Below the pieces are notes generated by a model. It saw only the letters and a program-made list of their open reading frames with translations. It ran no database searches and was not told the DNA's origin. A stretch of DNA of 64,000 bases from Laetmonice hystrix. Lineage: Eukaryota. The DNA is taken from contig OZ249442.1 of the NCBI GenBank assembly GCA_965235115.1, forward strand, positions 1,798,001-1,862,000, read 5' to 3'. The position numbers were made by a program, and so were the translations under genes. Below, piece by piece: positions 16,318-24,185 of this stretch (its first letter is position 1; the number at the start of each line of letters is the position of its first letter).

Positions 16318-17003
16318 GTAAGGCGGCACGGGCCGGTAACATGTAGTCATACTTTAACCTAGTCGTTGATAAAGAAACCATGATTTTATACTAAACCAGG
16401 GCGTGGATAGATGTCATGCGCGCTTGATAGGCAAGCATTGCAATTTTACATCGGCAGGACTTTGAGTAGGGCAAGTTGTGCAGGGCTGAGCATCCACTGA
16501 TCGAGGGACCTAGCTGTCTGTCTAGAAAGTAGGTCCAGGGCAGTCTGGGTTGCCGGGCGGAGCTGAGTGCAAAAAGGCCAAGGCCGCCAAAAAATGTATT
16601 TAGCTCTGTCTGGGCCGTGTCTGGCTCGGATTTCTAGACCATAGGTAATTGTGAATCCAACCATGCAGAAATGAAAGAAATTAATCAGTCATGTAACATA
16701 TATAACGTTACAGCCTAATGCTGTTACTTGGATTGGAAGTCTGTAAATGTATGACAAGGGCAAGGGCAAGGGCAAGTTGTGTATAGTACTTATTACTATA
16801 GTCTATACACAACTTGCGCTTGCAATATACAAATGTATATTGGAATTTAATAGTGTTGTTTATTTTATCATGAGAATAATGTTCTACAGTATTGTAGGGG
16901 TAAGATTTTTTAATAGGCTATATTATAACCCTGCATTATAAAGCTTTTGCTATTAATATTTGTCAGTCTTCCAAGATACCACCACCATCGGCAGCACTTC
17001 AAC

Positions 17004-18426
17004 ATGCCACCACCATCAACACTGCGGTCACCACCCGTACACCCGGTGGGGACTGAGAAGGCCACCTTTGGTATGTCCTGATTCTGGTTCCCTGAAGCCA
17101 TCTTTGGTGCAGCACCAGGAGTAATTCGCACCAGAGTTGGCTTCGCAGGGGGAACCACTGCAAACCCAACATACCAACACATGTAAGATTTTACATTATG
17201 TTTTTTGTCTGTATAATGTCTGCATGTCTGTATGAAAGTTTTGATAATTACACAAAAATGAAGATACAATAAGGGATATGTTAAATGATAGCAGAATTGG
17301 CATTGAATGTTTTTATAGCTGATGTTAAAAACAGGATAAAAACTGATATGTTTGCAATGGATCCTGGGACTGAATATTAGCTTTTTAATTATTACAACAT
17401 AAAACTTCTTTTCTCAGCATCTATTTGTTGTAAATGAATGACAACAATTAAATGTCTTTTTCCTTGTTTCTTTAAGCGGGAACCATACAGAAACTATTGA
17501 CATTGACTTTGACCCATCCAACACTGACTACAAGACACTCCTTAACATGTTCTGGAAGAATCACAACTCCACCTCCCACAGCAGCCCCCAGTACATGTCG
17601 GCGATATTCTACCACAATGAAGACCAACAAAAATTGGCTGAAACAAGTAAGGAAGAAGAGCAGGTCCACCTTTCACAACCAATCAGAACCCGGATCAGCT
17701 CAGCTGGACAGTTCTTCAATGCTGAAAGGTGAGTTTTACAAAGTTTACATTGTTATCAGCATGATTGACAGAGAAAACAAATGTTATGTTTTAAAATGAG
17801 TGTAAACCTAATGATTGATCTGACGTGTCAAACACTGTTAATTTGTTTGTTTCTCAGTTATCACCAGAAGTACATGTTGAGGCGTCACGGTGATCTGTTG
17901 AATAGTCTGAACTTGACAGACGAGCAGCTGATCGACTCCCATGTGGCAGCAAGACTCAACGGTTATGTCGCCAGCAATGGAAAGCTAGAACTGTTTGAAA
18001 AGGTATAGCAAAATTGATTTGTATTGTTCTAGATTTTGGTTAAGAAACTGAGAAAAACGTTGTCATACTATTTCAAGGCATCAGTTCACCACGATAAACG
18101 TTAATGACACTAGGGGGCACTGTGTGTTCAATGATGTTACGTTGTTATTCACCAGGTGGCGACACCATATTGAGTTTTTTTTCGTCTCCTAGCAAACACT
18201 GAGTGCGTCATTTTCTGGTATTAAAACCAGAAACATATTTTGCACTTTATTTAACTAAATTACACCTCACGATTAACATGTTATAAAACAGTATTATTTT
18301 TGTGTAGCTGATGAAGAAGGGTACTGAAGTACAATATGTTCCTTACAGGAGGTGCCGACGTTTGGACTCAATGCCCGCCAGGTGGCCTACCTACGACGTA
18401 AACTGGTGTGTCAACGTAATCTTTAA
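17004..18426 (+). CDS. MSRA: Peptide methionine sulfoxide reductase A, selenocysteine form (UGA at catalytic position), about 217 aa
   Basis: Exons 17004-17182, 17477-17728, 17858-18002, 18349-18426 (GT-AG, phases 2/2/0, 654 nt). Protein MPPPSTLRSPPVHPVGTEKATFGMS[TGA 17079-17081]FWFPEAIFGAAPGVIRTRVGFAGGTTANPTYQHIGNHTE...MFWKNH...QYMSAIFYHNEDQ...FFNAESYHQKY...AARLNGY...KLVCQRNL*. TGA aligns to the Cys of the G-C-F-W motif and the rest is intact. Confidence 0.93.
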
Positions 18427-19205
18427 CAGATCACTGGCACAGTGACACACAGTCTCGTCCCTAGACCCCACTTATCTGACCAATACACCCTAACAGATCA
18501 GTGGCACAGTGACACACAGTCTCGTCCCTAGACCCCACTTATCTGACCAATACACCCTAACAGATCACTGGCACAGTGACACACAGTCTCGTCCCTAGAC
18601 CCCACTTATCTGACCAATACACCCTAACAGATCACTGGCACAGTGACACACAGTCTCGTCCCTAGACCCCACTTATCTGACCAATACACCCTAACAGATC
18701 ACTGGCACAGTGACACACAGTCTCGTCCCTAGACCCCACGTATCTGACCAATACACCCTAACAGATCACTGGCACAGTGACACACAGTCTCGTCCCTAGA
18801 CCCCACTTATCTGACCAACAGATCACTGGCACAGTGACACACAGTCTCGTCCCTAGACCCCACTTATCTGACCAATACACCCTAACAGATCACTGGCACA
18901 GTGACACACAGTCTCGTCCCTAGACCCCACGTATCTGACCAATACACCCTAACAGATCACTGGCACAGTGACACACAGTCTCGTCCCTAGACCCCACTTA
19001 TCTGACCAACAGATCACTGGCACAGTGACACACAGTCTCGTCCCTAGACCCCACTTATCTGACCATACACCCTAACAGATCACTGGCACAGTGACACACA
19101 GTCTCGTCCCTAGACCCCACTTATCTGACCAATACACCCTAACAGATCACTGGCACAGTGACACACAGTCTCGTCCCTAGACCCCACTTATCTGACCATA
19201 CACCA
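18424..19205. repeat. 67-bp minisatellite starting at the MSRA stop codon
   Basis: taacagatcactggcacagtgacacacagtctcgtccctagaccccacttatctgaccaatacaccc, about 12 copies; the first TAA is the stop. Confidence 0.95.
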
Positions 19206-19534
19206 TGTACCAGATATCTTCCACCCACATATAGTCACGGATGCCTTTCCTGCAGTATGTCCTGGGAGTATGTTATCCCATAAGTATGTAGAAGGATGGT
19301 AGCAAGACTAGAAGACAGGATTTACAAGCAAATGTAGGCCCTGTATAGGTCGAGGCCCATAACAGGAAAACGAGGGCTAGAAAGCAGACCTGTTCTACCT
19401 AATTTTCAGAAATGTACAATTTAGATTTAACGATGCGTATTTGTTCCACCCTTATTTATTTTACATTATTGGTCGGTTTTTGTAACGATGTCTTCAGAAG
19501 CCTGCCGTGTCTAGTTCTGTACTTCGCCGTTAGG

Positions 19535-19602
19535 GGGCCTTCATGAAGTACGTTGGTAAAACCAAGGTGACTTGTGTCCAGCGGACGGAAAATATTTGGT
19601 CA
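19535..19602 (+). ncRNA. SECIS-like element (type II) in MSRA 3' UTR
   Basis: ATGAA core (19543-19547); helix II gtacgttgg pairs with ccagcggac (8/9); apical AAAA (19558-19561); mini-stem caag-GTGA-cttg; 3' core GGAA (19587-19590). Spacing fits ATGA-N11-12-AA-N27-28-GA. Folded by hand only. Confidence 0.75.
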
Positions 19603-19764
19603 CAGTAACACGGAACTAGACACGTGATCTTGTGGCTACATCTCAGTAACACGGAACTAGACACGTGATCTTGTGGCTACATCTCAGTAACACGGAACTA
19701 GACACGTGATCTTGTGGCTACATCTCAGTAACACGGAACTAGACACGTGATCTTGTGGCTACAT
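19603..19764. repeat. 41-bp repeat x4 directly after the SECIS
   Basis: cagtaacacggaactagacacgtgatcttgtggctacatct. Confidence 0.9.
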
Positions 19765-20787
19765 TGTTTTGCAATATAACAGTTTCTTTCGACCTCTAAT
19801 TCTCATTTGGATTTAATTCATTAAAAAGCTTGATTATCAATAACAATCTCCCCCCCCCCCCAACGTTCGAATACGAGTACTTGCATACATATCAGATTAG
19901 GAAGAACATGACACAAGCCGAGTCAGGGTATAGTGTATCATAGAACCAGTATGTAGCGGGCACACATGATATAGTACCGGTATACTGGATACAGCCCATA
20001 TATAGCCTTGATGCGTGCGAATAACGTTAAGAAATCGTTTTATGTGTACATATATCCGTAGTGTAGATCGAAGCTTTACACCCTTTGAAGATTTACATAA
20101 AAAGCTGATGGTAGCGAATAGGTGTGTTCATTGTTGTGGAAGTAGGGATTTCAAATCTAGCGGTTTCATCTTCAGGTTTTAAAAAGTTATAAACAAATAA
20201 ACATCAATGTTGGGGTTTTCTACTGGATTTCACCTTTTATGGGGAGTTGAAGCGTTTTGGGGGCACTGCCTAGGGGTACGCTTTTGGGAAAAAAATGAAG
20301 CCAGAAAACTGTGGGGGGAAGTAACCGAATTTTAGGGAGGAAGCCCCCCTCCCCCTCCAAATACTAAAACAAGCATGGGGGAAGCTCTGATTATATGCAG
20401 CAGTAAAGTCGACCAGTTTTGAGTCTACCATACAGAACAATGTCCTCACTCATGCTGCCACGCATGCAGCGAGATTCATCATTCTCAGCGTATTACAATT
20501 ATAATCGGGCTACATGTGCGTATTACATTATAATCAGGCTACATGTGCGTATTACATTATAGCTATTGTATATATTATATCTTATCAATATTAAAAGTAA
20601 TTCGATGTAATATCCGTTTAGGTTCGAATATTTATTCATTTATAGTACTTCGGTGTGGGTTGATACTTTGTAATCCTTGAAGCTTTTGTTTCTTCGTTGT
20701 AGTTTCTCAATGTAAGGTATAAACCCAGAACTCTTTATCACCAAGGAAACTACATTGTATATGTGTGTAGGCTCGTAAATATCCCTC

Positions 20788-22035
20788 ATGGGCACAGCTG
20801 TCAAGGTAAAATGTAGAACAGCGTATCAGGATATCCATTATGGGTACAGCTGCCAAGGTATAATGTAGAACAGCGTATCAGAATATCCATTATGGGTACA
20901 GCTGCCAAGGTATAATGTAGAACAGCGTATCAGAATATCCATTGGGTACAGCTGCCAAGGTATAATGTAGAACAGCGTATTAGAATATCCATTGGGTACA
21001 GCTGCCAAGGTATAATGTAGAACAGCGTATCAGAATATCCATTGGGTACAGCTGCCAAGGTATAATGTAGAACAGCGTATCAAAATATCCATTGGGTACA
21101 GCTGCCAAGGTATAATGTAGAACAGCGTATCAGAATATCCATTGGGTACAGCTGCCAAGGTATAATGTAGAACAGCGTATCAGAATATCCATTATGGGTA
21201 CAGCTGCCAAGGTATAATGTAGAACAGCGTATCAGAATATCCATTATGGGTACAGCTGCCAAGGTATAATGTAGAACAGCGTATCAGAATATCCATTATG
21301 GGTACAGCTGCCAAGGTATAATGTAGAACAGCGTATCAGAATATCCATTATGGGTACAGCTGCCAAGGTATAATGTAGAACAGCGTATCAGAATATCCAT
21401 TATGGGTACAGCTGCCAAGGTATAATGTAGAACAGCGTATCAGAATATCCATTATGGGTACAGCTGCCAAGGTATAATGTAGAACAGCGTATCAGAATAT
21501 CCATTATGGGTACAGCTGCCAAGGTATAATGTACACCGATCGTTCTGAGACCGTTACCGTATTGATACGATTGTACACCTATCGTTCTGAAACTGTTACC
21601 CTATTGATACGATTGTACACCTATCGTTCTGAGACTGTTACCGTATTGATACGATTGTACACCTATCGTTCTGAGACCGTTACCGTATTGATACGATTGT
21701 AATCCTATCGTTCTGAGACTGTTACCGTATTGATACGATTGTACACCTATCGTTCTGAGACTGTTACCGTATTGATACGATTGTACACCTATCGTTCTGA
21801 GACTGTTACCGTATTGATACGATTGTACACCTATCGTTTTGAGACCGTTACCGTATTGATACGATTGTACACCTATCGTTTTGAGACCGTTACCGTATTG
21901 ATACGATTGTACACCTATCGTTTTGAGACCGTTACCGTATTGATACGATTGTACACCGATCGTTCTGAGACTGTTACCGTATTGATACGATTGTACACCT
22001 ATCGTTTTGAGACCGTTACCGTATTGATACGATTA
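20788..22035. repeat. Adjacent 49/52-bp (to about 21533) and 42-bp minisatellites
   Basis: gggtacagctgccaaggtataatgtagaacagcgtatcagaatatccattat, then tacacctatcgttctgagactgttaccgtattgatacgattg. Confidence 0.95.
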
Positions 22036-22344
22036 TTTACCGAGATATGTAGAGTAAGTGGTAAGAAGTATTTTATCGAGATATAGAGTAGAGTAAGATA
22101 AGCAGAAGGCTGTTAACGGTTGGATGCACATTGTGGATCACTGTCGCAAGCGCACAAGGATCGAGACAGGACCGAAGCGGAATATCTGCTATCAGGGTTC
22201 AGAATGGTTGGTGGTGTGTCCACTTCACGAGAGTCGTCCGCCCCCGACCATACGGGACACTGTCCGTTTGTACAACCTCACACCCCCACCCCGCCTACAC
22301 TTACTGCTGTTTTCTAAATGTTTTCACAATTTTCAATTCTCAAC

Positions 22345-24185
22345 ATGTACCGATCGCCAGTATGTATAATTTTACCCCACCCAACATGTACCTATCGCCA
22401 GTTGTATGATTTTACCCCACCCAACATGTACCTATCGCCAGTTGTATGATTTTACCCCACCCAACATGTACCTATCGCCAGTATGTATGATTTTACCCCA
22501 CCCAACATGTACCTATCGACAGTATGTATGATTTTACCCCACCCAACATGTACCTATCGCCAGTATGTATGATTTTACCCCACCCAACATGTACCTATCG
22601 ACAGTATGTATGATTTTACCCCACCCAACATGTACCTATCGCCAGTATGTATAATTTTACCCCACCCAACATGTACCTATCGCCAGTTGTATGATTTTAC
22701 CCCACCCAACATGTACCTATCGCCAGTATGTATGATTTTACCCCACCCAACATGTACCTATCGACAGTATGTATGATTTTACCCCACCCAACATGTACCT
22801 ATCGACAGATGTATGATTTTACCCCACCCAACATGTACCGATCGACAGTATGTATGATTTTACCCCACCCAACATGTACCTATCGACAGTATGTATGATT
22901 TTACCCCACCCAACATGTACCTATCGCCAGTATGTATAATTTTACCCCACCCAACATGTACCTATCGCCAGTATGTATGATTTTACCCCACCCAACATGT
23001 ACCGATCGCCAGTATGTATGATTTTACCCCACCCAACATGTACCTATCGCCAGTATGTATGATTTTACCCCACCCAACATGTACCTATCGACAGTATGTA
23101 TGATTTTACCCCACCCAACATGTACCTATCGCCAGTATGTATTGTACCCCACCCAACATGTACCTATCGCCAGTATGTATGATTTTACCCCACCCAACAT
23201 GTACCTATCGCCAGTATGTATGATTTTACCCCACCCAACATGTACCTATCGCCAGTATGTATGATTTTACCCTGGCACCCAACATGTACCGATCGCCAGA
23301 TGTATGATTTTACCCTGGCACCCAACATGTACCTATCGCCAGATGTATGATTTTACCCCACCCAACATGTACCTATCGCCAGTATGTATGATTGTACCCC
23401 ACCCAACATGTACCTATCGCCAGTATGTATGATTTTACCCCACCCAACATGTACCTATCGCCAGTATGTATGATTTTACCCCACCCAACATGTACCTATC
23501 GACAGTATGTATGATTTTACCCCACCCAACATGTACCGATCGACAGTATGTATGATTGTACCCCACCCAACATGTCCCGATCGCCAGTATGTATGATTTT
23601 ACCCCACCCAACATGTACCTATCGCCAGTATGTATGATTTTACCCCACCCAACATGTACCTATCGCCAGTATGTATGATTTTACCCCACCCAACATGTAC
23701 CTAGATCGCCAGTATGTATGATTTTACCCCACCCAACATGTACCTATCGCCAGTATGTATGATTTTTTACCCCACCCAACATGTACCTATCGCCAGTATG
23801 TATGATTTTACCCCACCCAACATGTACCTAGATCGCCAGTATGTATGATTTTACCCCACCCAACATGTACCTATCGACAGATGTATGATTTTACCCCACC
23901 CAACATGTACCTGTCGCCAGTATGTATGATTTTTTACCCCACCCAACATGTACCTATCGCCAGTATGTATGATTTTACCCCACCCAACATGTACCTATCG
24001 CCAGTATGTATGATTTTACCCCACCCAACATGTACCTATCGCCAGTATGTATGATTTTACCCCACCCAACATGTACCGATCGCCAGATGTATGATTTTAC
24101 CCCACCCAACATGTACCTATCGCCAGTATGTATAATTTTACCCCACCCAACATACATACCTGTCGCCAGTATGTATGATTTTTTA
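22345..24185. repeat. 41-bp minisatellite
   Basis: atgtacctatcgccagtatgtatgattttaccccacccaac, about 45 copies. Confidence 0.95.

What the first reader, a model, noticed from the sequence alone, without database searches (positions are those of the whole stretch)
17004..18426. Hidden selenoprotein: MsrA with UGA (Sec) at the catalytic cysteine
Seen: an intact four-exon MsrA whose G-[C]-F-W active-site codon is TGA (GGT ATG TCC TGA TTC TGG, 17079-17081). All other MsrA motifs (RTRVGFAGG, PTY, HTE, AExYHQKY) are intact with no frameshift, and a single Cys lies near the C-terminus (KLVCQRNL). Established: Sec-containing MsrA exists in some bacteria, algae and invertebrates, while vertebrate and insect MsrA use Cys; standard pipelines truncate or miss such genes, as the ORF track does here. 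Inference: this is a selenium-dependent Met-S-sulfoxide reductase, not a pseudogene. The UGA lies upstream of three introns, so the mRNA should be NMD-sensitive when selenium is low.
Basis: partly seen in the sequence, partly recalled or inferred. Interest (0 to 1): 0.9.

Follow-up and report, generated by a model that had tools for sequence, protein, structure and literature searches.

The report
Selenocysteine MsrA gene, real and expressed
This is a genuine, transcribed methionine-sulfoxide reductase A gene whose catalytic residue is selenocysteine encoded by UGA; this selenoprotein type is already known from marine invertebrates, so it is a sound but ordinary find, with one small extra, a strongly folded RNA stretch right after the UGA.

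Summary
A four-exon MsrA gene (17004-18426, + strand, 217 codons) has TGA at codon 26, where the catalytic Cys normally sits. All three introns have GT..AG ends and there is no other lesion.

- **Not an error:** three DNA runs and one RNA-like run all show TGA. The RNA contigs carry the exon 1-2 and exon 2-3 joints exactly as predicted.
- **Conserved:** TGA sits at the same codon in eight other lineages, with conserved peptide on both sides. Cys-form homologues carry GCFW there.
- **Family:** exon 3 matches Pfam PF20939 (selenoprotein MsrA helical domain). A canonical Cys-MsrA lies elsewhere in the genome.
- **Machinery:** the genome has three tRNA-Sec genes and Sec-type GPx genes with SECIS elements.
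- **SECIS:** a type II candidate lies at 19534-19603, behind a 780-bp minisatellite. Rfam SECIS_1 aligns it full length in the right register, but at only 13.6 bits. Orthologues score 24.2 and 16.4 bits about 330-360 nt after their stops.
- **Extra:** the 84 nt after the UGA fold far better than synonymous recodings in all nine lineages, which resembles a Sec redefinition element (SRE).

Sec-MsrA is already documented in marine invertebrates and non-insect arthropods, so this is a new member of a known kind. Earlier notes of this scan cover only this same window.

The parts
16972..17003 (+). Minimal 5' UTR
   Evidence: An RNA-like contig of run X4 starts at 16972 and runs through the start codon and the TGA without any difference.
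17004..17182 (+). Exon 1 (ATG start, codons 1-59 plus 2 nt)
   Evidence: Translation. PMSR hit on the part after the UGA. The joint 17182>17477 with GT..AG is seen in an X4 contig.
17079..17081 (+). TGA = selenocysteine codon 26 at the catalytic position
   Evidence: In frame. Unchanged in DNA and RNA contigs. TGA at the same codon in eight other lineages. Cys in homologues P0033, P0039 and P0049.
17085..17157 (+). SRE-like hairpin starting 4 nt after the UGA
   Evidence: -40.6 kcal/mol; z -4.6 against dinucleotide shuffles and about -4 against synonymous recodings. It is the only such segment of the CDS. L032 has the same register.
17477..17728 (+). Exon 2 (GNHTE...QYMSAIFYH core)
   Evidence: Translation. 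PMSR E 1e-18. Both flanking joints are seen in X4 contigs; 17728 is a G/A polymorphism.
17858..18002 (+). Exon 3 (YHQKY motif and start of the helical domain)
   Evidence: Translation. PF20939 E 9e-7. In the PDB it matches only the 4LWJ-group MsrA chains.
18349..18426 (+). Exon 4 (C-terminal tail with the sole Cys213; TAA stop at 18424-18426)
   Evidence: Translation. The tail matches in length and pattern the unspliced tails of the coral-metagenome orthologue and of lineage E. No RNA contig covers this junction.
18424..19204 (+). 67-bp minisatellite (12 copies) at the start of the 3' UTR, between the stop codon and the SECIS
   Evidence: Tandem Repeats Finder.
19534..19603 (+). Type II SECIS candidate (ATGA 19543-19546, unpaired AAAA 19558-19561, GA 19588-19589)
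   Evidence: My own descriptor scan. Rfam SECIS_1 aligns full length in the right register at 13.6 bits. Helix II lines up column for column with the coral orthologue's SECIS, with three pairs changed on both sides. No differences are listed within it in the DNA contigs that cover it, while nearby positions vary.
19603..19764 (+). 41-bp perfect tandem repeat (4 copies) abutting the SECIS; its first unit pairs with 19506-19518 to extend helix I
19820..19825 (+). ATTAAA, first candidate poly(A) signal after the SECIS
   Evidence: Pattern search.
20196..20201 (+). AATAAA, second candidate poly(A) signal
   Evidence: Pattern search. An X4 RNA-like contig covers 19972-20163 just upstream.

Best explanation
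The locus encodes a 217-residue selenoprotein methionine-S-sulfoxide reductase A. It belongs to the divergent subfamily that carries a C-terminal helical domain, the same subfamily as the Clostridium oremlandii selenoprotein MsrA.

Proposed mechanism, with its status:
- **Shown:** the gene is transcribed, and introns 1 and 2 are removed.
- **Inferred:** the UGA at codon 26 is read as selenocysteine by tRNA-Sec, directed by a type II SECIS in the 3' UTR about 1.1 kb after the stop.
- **Inferred:** recoding is probably helped by a very stable hairpin that starts 4 nt after the UGA, acting like a Sec redefinition element.
- **By analogy with characterised MsrAs:** Sec26 attacks the sulfoxide of Met-S-SO, releasing Met and forming a selenenic acid.
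- **Hypothesis:** the only Cys, Cys213 in the flexible C-terminal tail, resolves this intermediate as a selenenylsulfide, which a thiol reductant then reduces.

The genome also keeps a canonical Cys-MsrA, so this gene is a second, selenium-dependent paralogue.
For: - **Gene model and domains:**
- **TGA is real:** it is present in three DNA runs and in RNA-like contigs. Spliced joints 17182>17477 and 17728>17858 are seen, and the RNA contigs lie on exons, not introns.
- **TGA is conserved:** it sits at the identical codon in L001/L015, L005/L008, L030, L031, L032, L035, L036 and L037. The ATF-x-M-S/G motif upstream and the F-W-x-P-E/D-A motif downstream are conserved. Cys forms P0033, P0039 and P0049 have GCFWGPD at that place.
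- **Sec machinery:** three identical tRNA-Sec genes score 79.9 bits, and ARAGORN calls them SeC with anticodon TCA.
- **Other selenoproteins in this genome:** the two best SECIS_1 hits genome-wide lie just downstream of GPx genes, one of which stops at the NVASL-stop Sec site.
- **SECIS:** the candidate at 19534-19603 is aligned by Rfam SECIS_1 over the whole model in the right register. The reported E of 5.8 is multiplied by 4227 families. For this one family, over about 1.8 kb of one strand, I calculate about 0.008.
- **SECIS in orthologues:** elements lie 330-360 nt after the stop at 24.2 bits (L030) and 16.4 bits (coral metagenome), and there is a textbook type II element in lineage E.
- **Spacing:** without the minisatellite, the window's SECIS would lie about 400 nt from the stop.
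- **Post-UGA structure:** z against synonymous recoding is -1.3 to -5.4 in all nine lineages, and this is specific to that segment.
- **Paralogue:** a canonical MsrA with GMGCFWG lies on contig C18.
Against: - The SECIS score (13.6 bits) is far below Rfam's gathering score (35).
- Helix II has an A-G mismatch at its third pair.
- My looser descriptor finds 6 such sites per 128 kb, so one falling in the UTR by chance has p of about 0.05-0.07.
- Covariance models built from orthologue SECIS elements did not recover the window's element. Those models also missed L030's SECIS and the GPx SECIS elements, so this says little.
- No RNA contig covers exons 3-4 or the SECIS, so the 3' UTR extent is inferred.
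- There is no protein-level evidence for Sec insertion.
- The hairpin's pairing register is shared only with L032. Other lineages fold differently.
- Cys213 is not conserved. Other lineages instead have a Cys nine residues after Sec.
Confidence: 0.88

Rival explanations
1. The gene descends from a real Sec-MsrA but is decaying in this genome. Minisatellite expansion and weak SECIS features would have impaired recoding, so the mRNA mostly yields a 25-residue peptide and is degraded.
For: The window's SECIS is the weakest of the set, at 13.6 bits against 16.4 and 24.2 in orthologues, and it has a helix II mismatch. A 780-bp repeat lies between the stop and the SECIS. RNA-like coverage is low, at depth 5-8.
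Against: The reading frame, all splice sites and all motifs are intact. Of four polymorphisms seen in the coding exons, two are synonymous and two are conservative replacements, and none is disabling. No differences are listed within the SECIS in the DNA contigs, while its flanks vary. The post-UGA hairpin is maintained well above the synonymous-recoding expectation. In known selenoprotein mRNAs, SECIS elements work at distances of 1 kb or more from the UGA (textbook knowledge).
Confidence: 0.07
2. It is a pseudogene or null allele created by a TGC/TGT-to-TGA nonsense mutation at the catalytic Cys codon.
For: A single transition or transversion from a Cys codon gives TGA. Standard ORF callers truncate the gene.
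Against: TGA sits at the same codon in eight other lineages whose exon 2 peptides are only about 46-60% identical to the window's, with conserved sequence on both sides. SECIS elements are present in orthologue 3' UTRs. The Sec machinery is present.
Confidence: 0.02
3. It is an assembly or sequencing error, and the true codon is TGC or TGT.
For: None was found.
Against: Contigs from three DNA runs and one RNA-like run cover 17079-17081 with no difference listed, while nearby SNPs at 17120, 17171 and 17178 are reported.
Confidence: 0.01

Closest known systems
Sec-containing MsrA predicted in marine invertebrates and non-insect arthropods (Jiang et al. 2012, PMC3473315; Chipman et al. 2014, PMC4244043)
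   Same: It is an animal MsrA with UGA at the catalytic position and a 3' UTR SECIS. The papers report it in sponge, Trichoplax, Nematostella, Capitella, amphioxus, centipede, Daphnia and Ixodes.
   Different: This copy is in another genome, whose identity is hidden from me. Its 3' UTR carries a 780-bp minisatellite between the stop and the SECIS. The papers as I read them do not mention a post-UGA structured element. PMC4244043 proposes conversion to Cys in vertebrates and insects, whereas here the Sec form coexists with a separate canonical Cys-MsrA.
Clostridium (Alkaliphilus) oremlandii 1-Cys-type selenoprotein MsrA (PDB 4LWJ/4LWK/4LWL/4LWM, 4U66, 7C13; Pfam PF20939)
   Same: It has the same subfamily signature: a PMSR core plus the C-terminal helical domain. 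Exon 3 matches only these PDB chains, and PF20939 hits at E 9e-7. The protein lengths are also close: 217 residues here, and 208-217 for the PDB chains.
   Different: That protein is bacterial, so its SECIS is a hairpin directly after the UGA (from my memory of the literature). The window's gene has introns and a eukaryote-type 3' UTR SECIS. Identity is modest, with exon 2 at E 7e-9.
Chlamydomonas reinhardtii selenoprotein MsrA
   Same: It is a eukaryotic Sec-MsrA with a characterised enzyme (cited in PMC4244043).
   Different: I did not compare the sequences here. It is algal, not animal.
Canonical animal Cys-MsrA (paralogue in this genome, G000 contig C18:22562217-22562603)
   Same: It has the same PMSR fold and presumably the same reaction.
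   Different: It has GMGCFWG with Cys, a GYCG...VSCP C-terminal pair of resolving Cys residues, and no helical domain.
Sec redefinition elements (SRE) of SEPN1 and other selenoprotein mRNAs
   Same: They are stable stem-loops starting a few nucleotides 3' of the Sec UGA within the coding sequence, detectable as constraint on synonymous sites.
   Different: None is described for MsrA in the searched library. The pairing register is not conserved across all lineages here. Function is untested.

Membership tests
Eukaryotic selenoprotein gene | In-frame UGA aligned with Cys in homologues | tested here: met
   TGA at codon 26. P0033, P0039 and P0049 have GCFW at that place.
Eukaryotic selenoprotein gene | UGA and its flanking coding sequence conserved across species | tested here: met
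   Eight further lineages have TGA at the same codon and conserved peptide on both sides.
Eukaryotic selenoprotein gene | SECIS element (ATGA / AA / GA kink-turn stem-loop) in the 3' UTR | tested here: inconclusive
   The candidate at 19534-19603 has all the core features. SECIS_1 aligns it full length in the right register, but at only 13.6 bits against a 35-bit gathering score. True GPx SECIS elements of this genome also fall below gathering, at 28-29 bits. Presence in the transcript is not shown.
Eukaryotic selenoprotein gene | Host genome has Sec-decoding machinery | tested here: met
   Three tRNA-Sec genes at 79.9 bits, called SeC (TCA) by ARAGORN. Sec-type GPx genes with SECIS are present. 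The protein factors (SBP2, eEFSec, SPS2 and others) were not searched.
Eukaryotic selenoprotein gene | Selenium actually incorporated at the UGA | not testable with these tools
   This needs 75Se labelling, mass spectrometry or ribosome profiling.
MsrA (Pfam PF01625, PMSR) | PMSR domain with the catalytic G-C/U-F-W, the H-x-E and the Y-H-Q motifs | tested here: met
   PF01625 hits at E 5e-8 and 1e-18 on the pieces. The motifs S-U-F-W, GNHTE and AESYHQKY are read directly.
Selenoprotein-type MsrA with C-terminal helical domain (PF20939) | MsrA_helical domain after the PMSR core | tested here: met
   PF20939 at E 9e-7, 29 bits against a 23.7-bit cut-off. In the PDB only the 4LWJ-group chains match exon 3.
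Selenoprotein-type MsrA with C-terminal helical domain (PF20939) | Strict '1-Cys' chemistry (no resolving Cys) | tested here: inconclusive
   The window's protein has one Cys, Cys213, in the tail. All eight Sec-form lineages with both ends known have a Cys either nine residues after Sec or in the C-terminal tail. The chemistry cannot be tested here.
Sec redefinition element (SRE) | Stable stem-loop beginning within a few nucleotides 3' of the UGA | tested here: met
   The hairpin at 17085-17157 has -40.6 kcal/mol and z -4.6.
Sec redefinition element (SRE) | Structure beyond what the encoded peptide imposes, conserved among orthologues | tested here: inconclusive
   All nine lineages show excess stability over synonymous recodings, specific to this segment. 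However, RNAalifold finds no single conserved pairing, with covariation term +0.72. Only L032 shares the window's register.
Sec redefinition element (SRE) | Raises UGA recoding efficiency | not testable with these tools
   This needs reporter assays with synonymous stem-breaking mutations.

The most novel reading that the evidence does not exclude
Eukaryotic Sec-MsrA mRNAs of this subfamily carry a selected RNA structure directly 3' of the Sec UGA. This would be an SRE, or possibly a relic of the bacterial in-frame SECIS of the same protein family, that tunes recoding. In addition, these enzymes are not truly '1-Cys': they use a resolving Cys that has moved between two positions, nine residues after Sec or in the C-terminal tail, as here with Cys213.
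Probability: 0.4. Interest if true: 0.45.

Novelty: new member of a known kind. Interest (0 to 1): 0.3.

Why it matters
- **Annotation:** standard pipelines truncate or miss this gene, so the genome's selenoproteome and methionine-sulfoxide repair capacity would be under-counted.
- **Evolution:** a Sec-type MsrA with a helical domain coexists with a canonical Cys-MsrA in one animal genome. This suggests the Sec form is a separate old paralogue that vertebrates and insects lost, rather than one they converted to Cys. That qualifies statements in the literature.
- **RNA structure:** the post-UGA structure is seen in nine lineages. It gives a cheap, testable case for how in-frame structures assist Sec recoding outside vertebrates.
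- **Overall:** none of this changes the field's picture. It is a well-supported routine selenoprotein find.

Tried and rejected
- **Rfam, wide searches:** the gathering threshold over the whole window gave no hit. E-value searches over 8 kb and 2.4 kb showed no SECIS, because the reported E-value is multiplied by 4227 families. The same held for nine orthologue loci. Only 161-nt searches revealed the SECIS_1 alignments. Lineage E's textbook SECIS was still missed.
- **Reading by eye:** I first dismissed the 19543 element because I paired ATGA with the wrong GA (after). My scan corrected this.
- **My covariance models:** R1 (coral metagenome only) and R2 (coral plus lineage E) did not recover the window's SECIS. 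They also missed L030's SECIS and the GPx SECIS elements. I discard this as an insensitive test.
- **Plain local alignment:** aligning 3' regions between lineages did not single out the SECIS, and scores were at the shuffled level.
- **L031 and L032:** my scan found no convincing SECIS in these transcript contigs. The cause could be contig ends or unusual elements.
- **Conserved pairing after the UGA:** RNAalifold did not support a single conserved scheme.
- **RNA runs:** none is on record for this organism. Run X4 is labelled '?' and I judge it RNA-derived only from its spliced, exon-only contigs.
- **Not done:** I did not fold or structure-search the protein, because a read-through protein cannot be given by reference. 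I did not identify the organism.

Full report
**1. The observation**

- Exon 1 (17004-17182) encodes 25 residues ending ATFGMS, then TGA at 17079-17081, then FWFPEAIFG...RTRVGFAGG...PTYQH.
- Exon 2 (17477-17728) carries the GNHTE...QYMSAIFYH core.
- Exon 3 (17858-18002) starts with YHQKY.
- Exon 4 (18349-18426) ends KLVCQRNL followed by TAA.
- All introns have GT..AG ends and the phases fit. The product has 217 codons, and Cys213 is its only Cys.

Pfam PMSR hits the post-UGA part of exon 1 (E 5e-8) and exon 2 (E 1e-18). Exon 3 hits PF20939, 'Selenoprotein methionine sulfoxide reductase A, helical domain' (E 9e-7). Among solved structures, exon 3 matches only the 4LWJ/4LWK/4LWL/4LWM/4U66/7C13 MsrA chains.

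**2. Real sequence, and expressed**

Four public runs from one sample hold the stretch. Laid on 16800-20200, they show the following.
- Contigs of the three deep runs (X1-X3) cover introns and exons. They list nearby SNPs (17120, 17171, 17178, 17728) but nothing at 17079-17081.
- Contigs of the small run X4 lie on exons only and carry two spliced joints. One is 17182>17477 (GT..AG). The other is 17727>17858 with one extra A, which is simply the A allele of the G/A SNP at 17728 and so gives the predicted junction 17728>17858.
- One X4 contig (16972-17121) spans the start codon and the TGA unchanged.
- The joined form is absent from the DNA-like runs. The genome has no third PMSR locus, so a retrocopy is excluded.

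I therefore take X4 to be RNA-derived. The gene is transcribed, introns 1 and 2 are removed as predicted, and the mRNA keeps the UGA. The exon 3-4 junction has no RNA support. It is supported instead by homology of the exon 4 tail to the unspliced C-terminal tails of orthologues.

**3. Conservation of the UGA**

Exon-sized queries found homologues in public assemblies, and I fetched their contigs. Eight further lineages have TGA at exactly this codon.
- L001/L015 (genomic).
- L005/L008, which includes TARA metagenome scaffolds and which I call coral in this report (genomic).
- L030, L031, L032, L035 and L037 (intron-free contigs, most likely transcripts).
- L036 (a metagenome contig with no intron downstream of the UGA).

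In all of them the motif ATF-x-M/L-S/G is conserved upstream and F-W-x-P-E/D-A-x-F-G downstream. Exon 2 identities to the window are only about 46-60%. A stop codon held in place at that divergence, with conserved peptide on both sides, is the classical signature of Sec.

More distant members of the same subfamily (P0033, P0039, P0049) have GCFWGPD there. Many database proteins of the family start just after this position, as expected for miscalled selenoproteins.

**4. Sec machinery**

The genome (627 Mb, 35 contigs; the window is contig C7:1798001-1862000) has three identical tRNA-Sec genes at 79.9 bits, against a 47-bit cut-off. ARAGORN calls them tRNA-SeC with anticodon TCA.

The two best genome-wide hits of Rfam SECIS_1 (28.8 and 28.0 bits, below the 35-bit gathering score) lie just downstream of glutathione peroxidase genes. 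One of these genes has an ORF ending ...NVASL at a stop, which is the GPx Sec site. So the organism makes selenoproteins, and Rfam's model under-scores its true SECIS elements.

**5. The SECIS**

Wide Rfam searches found nothing, because the tool multiplies E-values by 4227 families. My descriptor scan found one ATGA-type candidate in the first 2 kb after the stop.
- ATGA lies at 19543-19546.
- A 9-position helix II follows, with 8 positions paired.
- An unpaired AAAA starts 12 nt after the ATGA.
- There is a short upper helix with a GUGA loop, which makes it type II.
- GA lies at 19588-19589.
- A helix I follows, which a unit of the adjacent 41-bp repeat extends.

This is the element another first-stage note (s1-337691) flagged.

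In a 161-nt search, Rfam SECIS_1 aligns 19534-19603 over the whole model in this same register, at 13.6 bits. The reported E of 5.8 includes the factor of 4227. For this one family, over about 1.8 kb on one strand, I calculate about 0.008.

Orthologues have SECIS elements 330-360 nt after their stops.
- L030: 24.2 bits, E 0.007 even with the family factor.
- Coral (L006): 16.4 bits.
- Lineage E: a textbook type II element plus a second, weaker copy, which Rfam misses.

The window and coral elements align without gaps through helix II. They share ATGAAGT and GGACGGA, and three pairs are changed on both sides with pairing kept.

In the window the SECIS lies 1117 nt after the stop, because a 67-bp x 12 minisatellite (18424-19204) sits in between. 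Without the extra copies the distance would be about 400 nt. No differences are listed within the element in the DNA contigs that cover it, while positions 19343-19417 vary. ATTAAA (19820) and AATAAA (20196) follow, and an RNA-like contig covers 19972-20163.

Weak points:
- The score is low, and there is an A-G mismatch in helix II.
- My loose descriptor hits 6 sites per 128 kb.
- Covariance models built from orthologue elements did not find it. They also missed L030's and the GPx elements, so that test is uninformative.
- No RNA contig covers it.

I rate the SECIS as probable, not proven.

**6. Structure right after the UGA**

The stretch 17085-17157 folds into a long hairpin of -40.6 kcal/mol, with z -4.6 against dinucleotide shuffles.

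Coding sequence could impose such a structure, so I compared each native sequence with synonymous recodings of the same peptide drawn from the gene's own codon usage.
- The 84 nt after the UGA are more stable than expected in all nine lineages. The z-scores are -3.96, -5.42, -1.69, -3.80, -1.29 and -2.11, and -2.13, -1.47 and -2.30.
- In sliding windows along seven full coding sequences, this segment has the lowest folding energy in every case. Its z-score is the lowest or close to the lowest, and the other segments mostly scatter around zero.
- The window and L032 share one register, in which the WFPEA codons pair with the VGFAGG codons (L032: -50.4 kcal/mol, z -4.9). L030 and L031 share a different local hairpin.
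- RNAalifold finds no single conserved pairing.

This looks like a Sec redefinition element whose stability, rather than its exact shape, is kept. No paper in the searchable library links an SRE to MsrA. Function is untested.

**7. Mechanism**

By analogy with characterised MsrAs, Sec26 attacks Met-S-sulfoxide and becomes a selenenic acid. How it is recycled is open.

Those orthologues instead have a Cys nine residues after Sec, in the motif FGC. Among the eight lineages whose two ends are both known:
- Four have only the FGC Cys: the coral lineage, L030, L031 and L036.
- Three have only a tail Cys: the window, L032 and L035.
- One has both: L037.
- None has neither.

This suggests a resolving Cys that has changed place, and it is a hypothesis only.

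The NMD prediction rests on the mammalian rule that a stop more than 50-55 nt upstream of an exon junction triggers decay. The UGA lies 101 nt upstream of the first junction. This is untested here.

**8. Comparison with what is known**

Sec-MsrA is reported as widespread in marine invertebrates: sponge, Trichoplax, Nematostella, Capitella and amphioxus, though not Lottia (PMC3473315). It is also reported in centipede, Daphnia and Ixodes (PMC4244043). The subfamily with the helical domain includes the solved C. oremlandii selenoprotein MsrA.

This genome also has a canonical MsrA on contig C18, with GMGCFWG and a GYCG...VSCP tail. The Sec form is therefore a distinct paralogue here. That fits loss in vertebrates and insects better than conversion, but I built no tree.

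**9. Verdict**

This is a new member of a known kind. The post-UGA structure and the moving resolving Cys are modest additions worth a bench test. Earlier notes of this scan (s1-337656 and s1-337691) concern this same window only.

Noticed in passing
window 18424-19204: A 67-bp minisatellite (12 copies, 93% matches) begins exactly at the MsrA stop codon and fills the first 780 bp of the 3' UTR, pushing the SECIS to 1.1 kb from the stop. Short-read contigs collapse it, so its copy number could not be verified.
   Followed up: partly
window 19603-19764 (and 19506-19518): Four perfect copies of a 41-bp unit start right after the SECIS. The first unit pairs with 19506-19518 to give a 12-13 bp outer stem around the SECIS, and any of the four units could in principle supply that arm.
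   Followed up: partly
window 17085-17157; L030:183-270; L031:138-225; L032:174-260; L035:128-215; L036:509-596; L037:52-139: The 84 nt after the Sec UGA are more structured than synonymous recodings in all nine lineages. No other part of the CDS stands out this consistently. This is an SRE-like feature not found in the searched literature for MsrA.
   Followed up: yes
window 18409-18411 (Cys213); orthologue loci L005, L030, L031, L032, L035, L036, L037: Sec-form orthologues carry a Cys either nine residues after Sec (FGC) or within the last 8 residues of the tail. Of eight lineages, four have only the first, three only the second, one both, and none neither. Cys-form homologues P0033 and P0049 have neither.
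   Followed up: partly
L024:1712-1764 and L024:1887-1938: One orthologue lineage (metagenome scaffolds) has two tandem SECIS-like elements 175 nt apart in its 3' region. The second is a weaker copy of the first.
   Followed up: no
L019 (G000:C1:30981186-30984249, - strand) and L020 (G000:C2:43515457-43518522, + strand): Two glutathione peroxidase genes have SECIS elements just downstream (Rfam SECIS_1 at 28.8 and 28.0 bits). The L019 ORF stops at the NVASL Sec site. The L019 SECIS shares the CUUCAUGAAG start and a GUGACU apical motif with the MsrA candidate.
   Followed up: partly
window 17178 and 17728: Two replacement polymorphisms are seen in the sample's contigs: C>A at 17178 (His59Asn) and G>A at 17728 (Ser144Asn, the allele seen in the RNA-like contig). 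Two synonymous ones lie at 17120 and 17171.
   Followed up: no
window 16759-16831: A near-perfect inverted repeat (about 29-nt arms) lies about 180 bp upstream of the MsrA start codon, preceded by a GCAAGG hexamer run. It gave weak chance-level miRNA-model hits only.
   Followed up: no
window 20778-24000 and beyond: Several back-to-back satellite arrays (52-bp x 15, 42-bp x 12, 41-bp x 40 or more) fill the region downstream of the gene.
   Followed up: no
G000:C1:40495451-40580032: A dense array of more than 30 tRNA-like hits at about 2-5 kb spacing showed up as sub-threshold tRNA-Sec model matches (43.6 bits each). It is probably a tandem tRNA gene cluster of another isotype.
   Followed up: no
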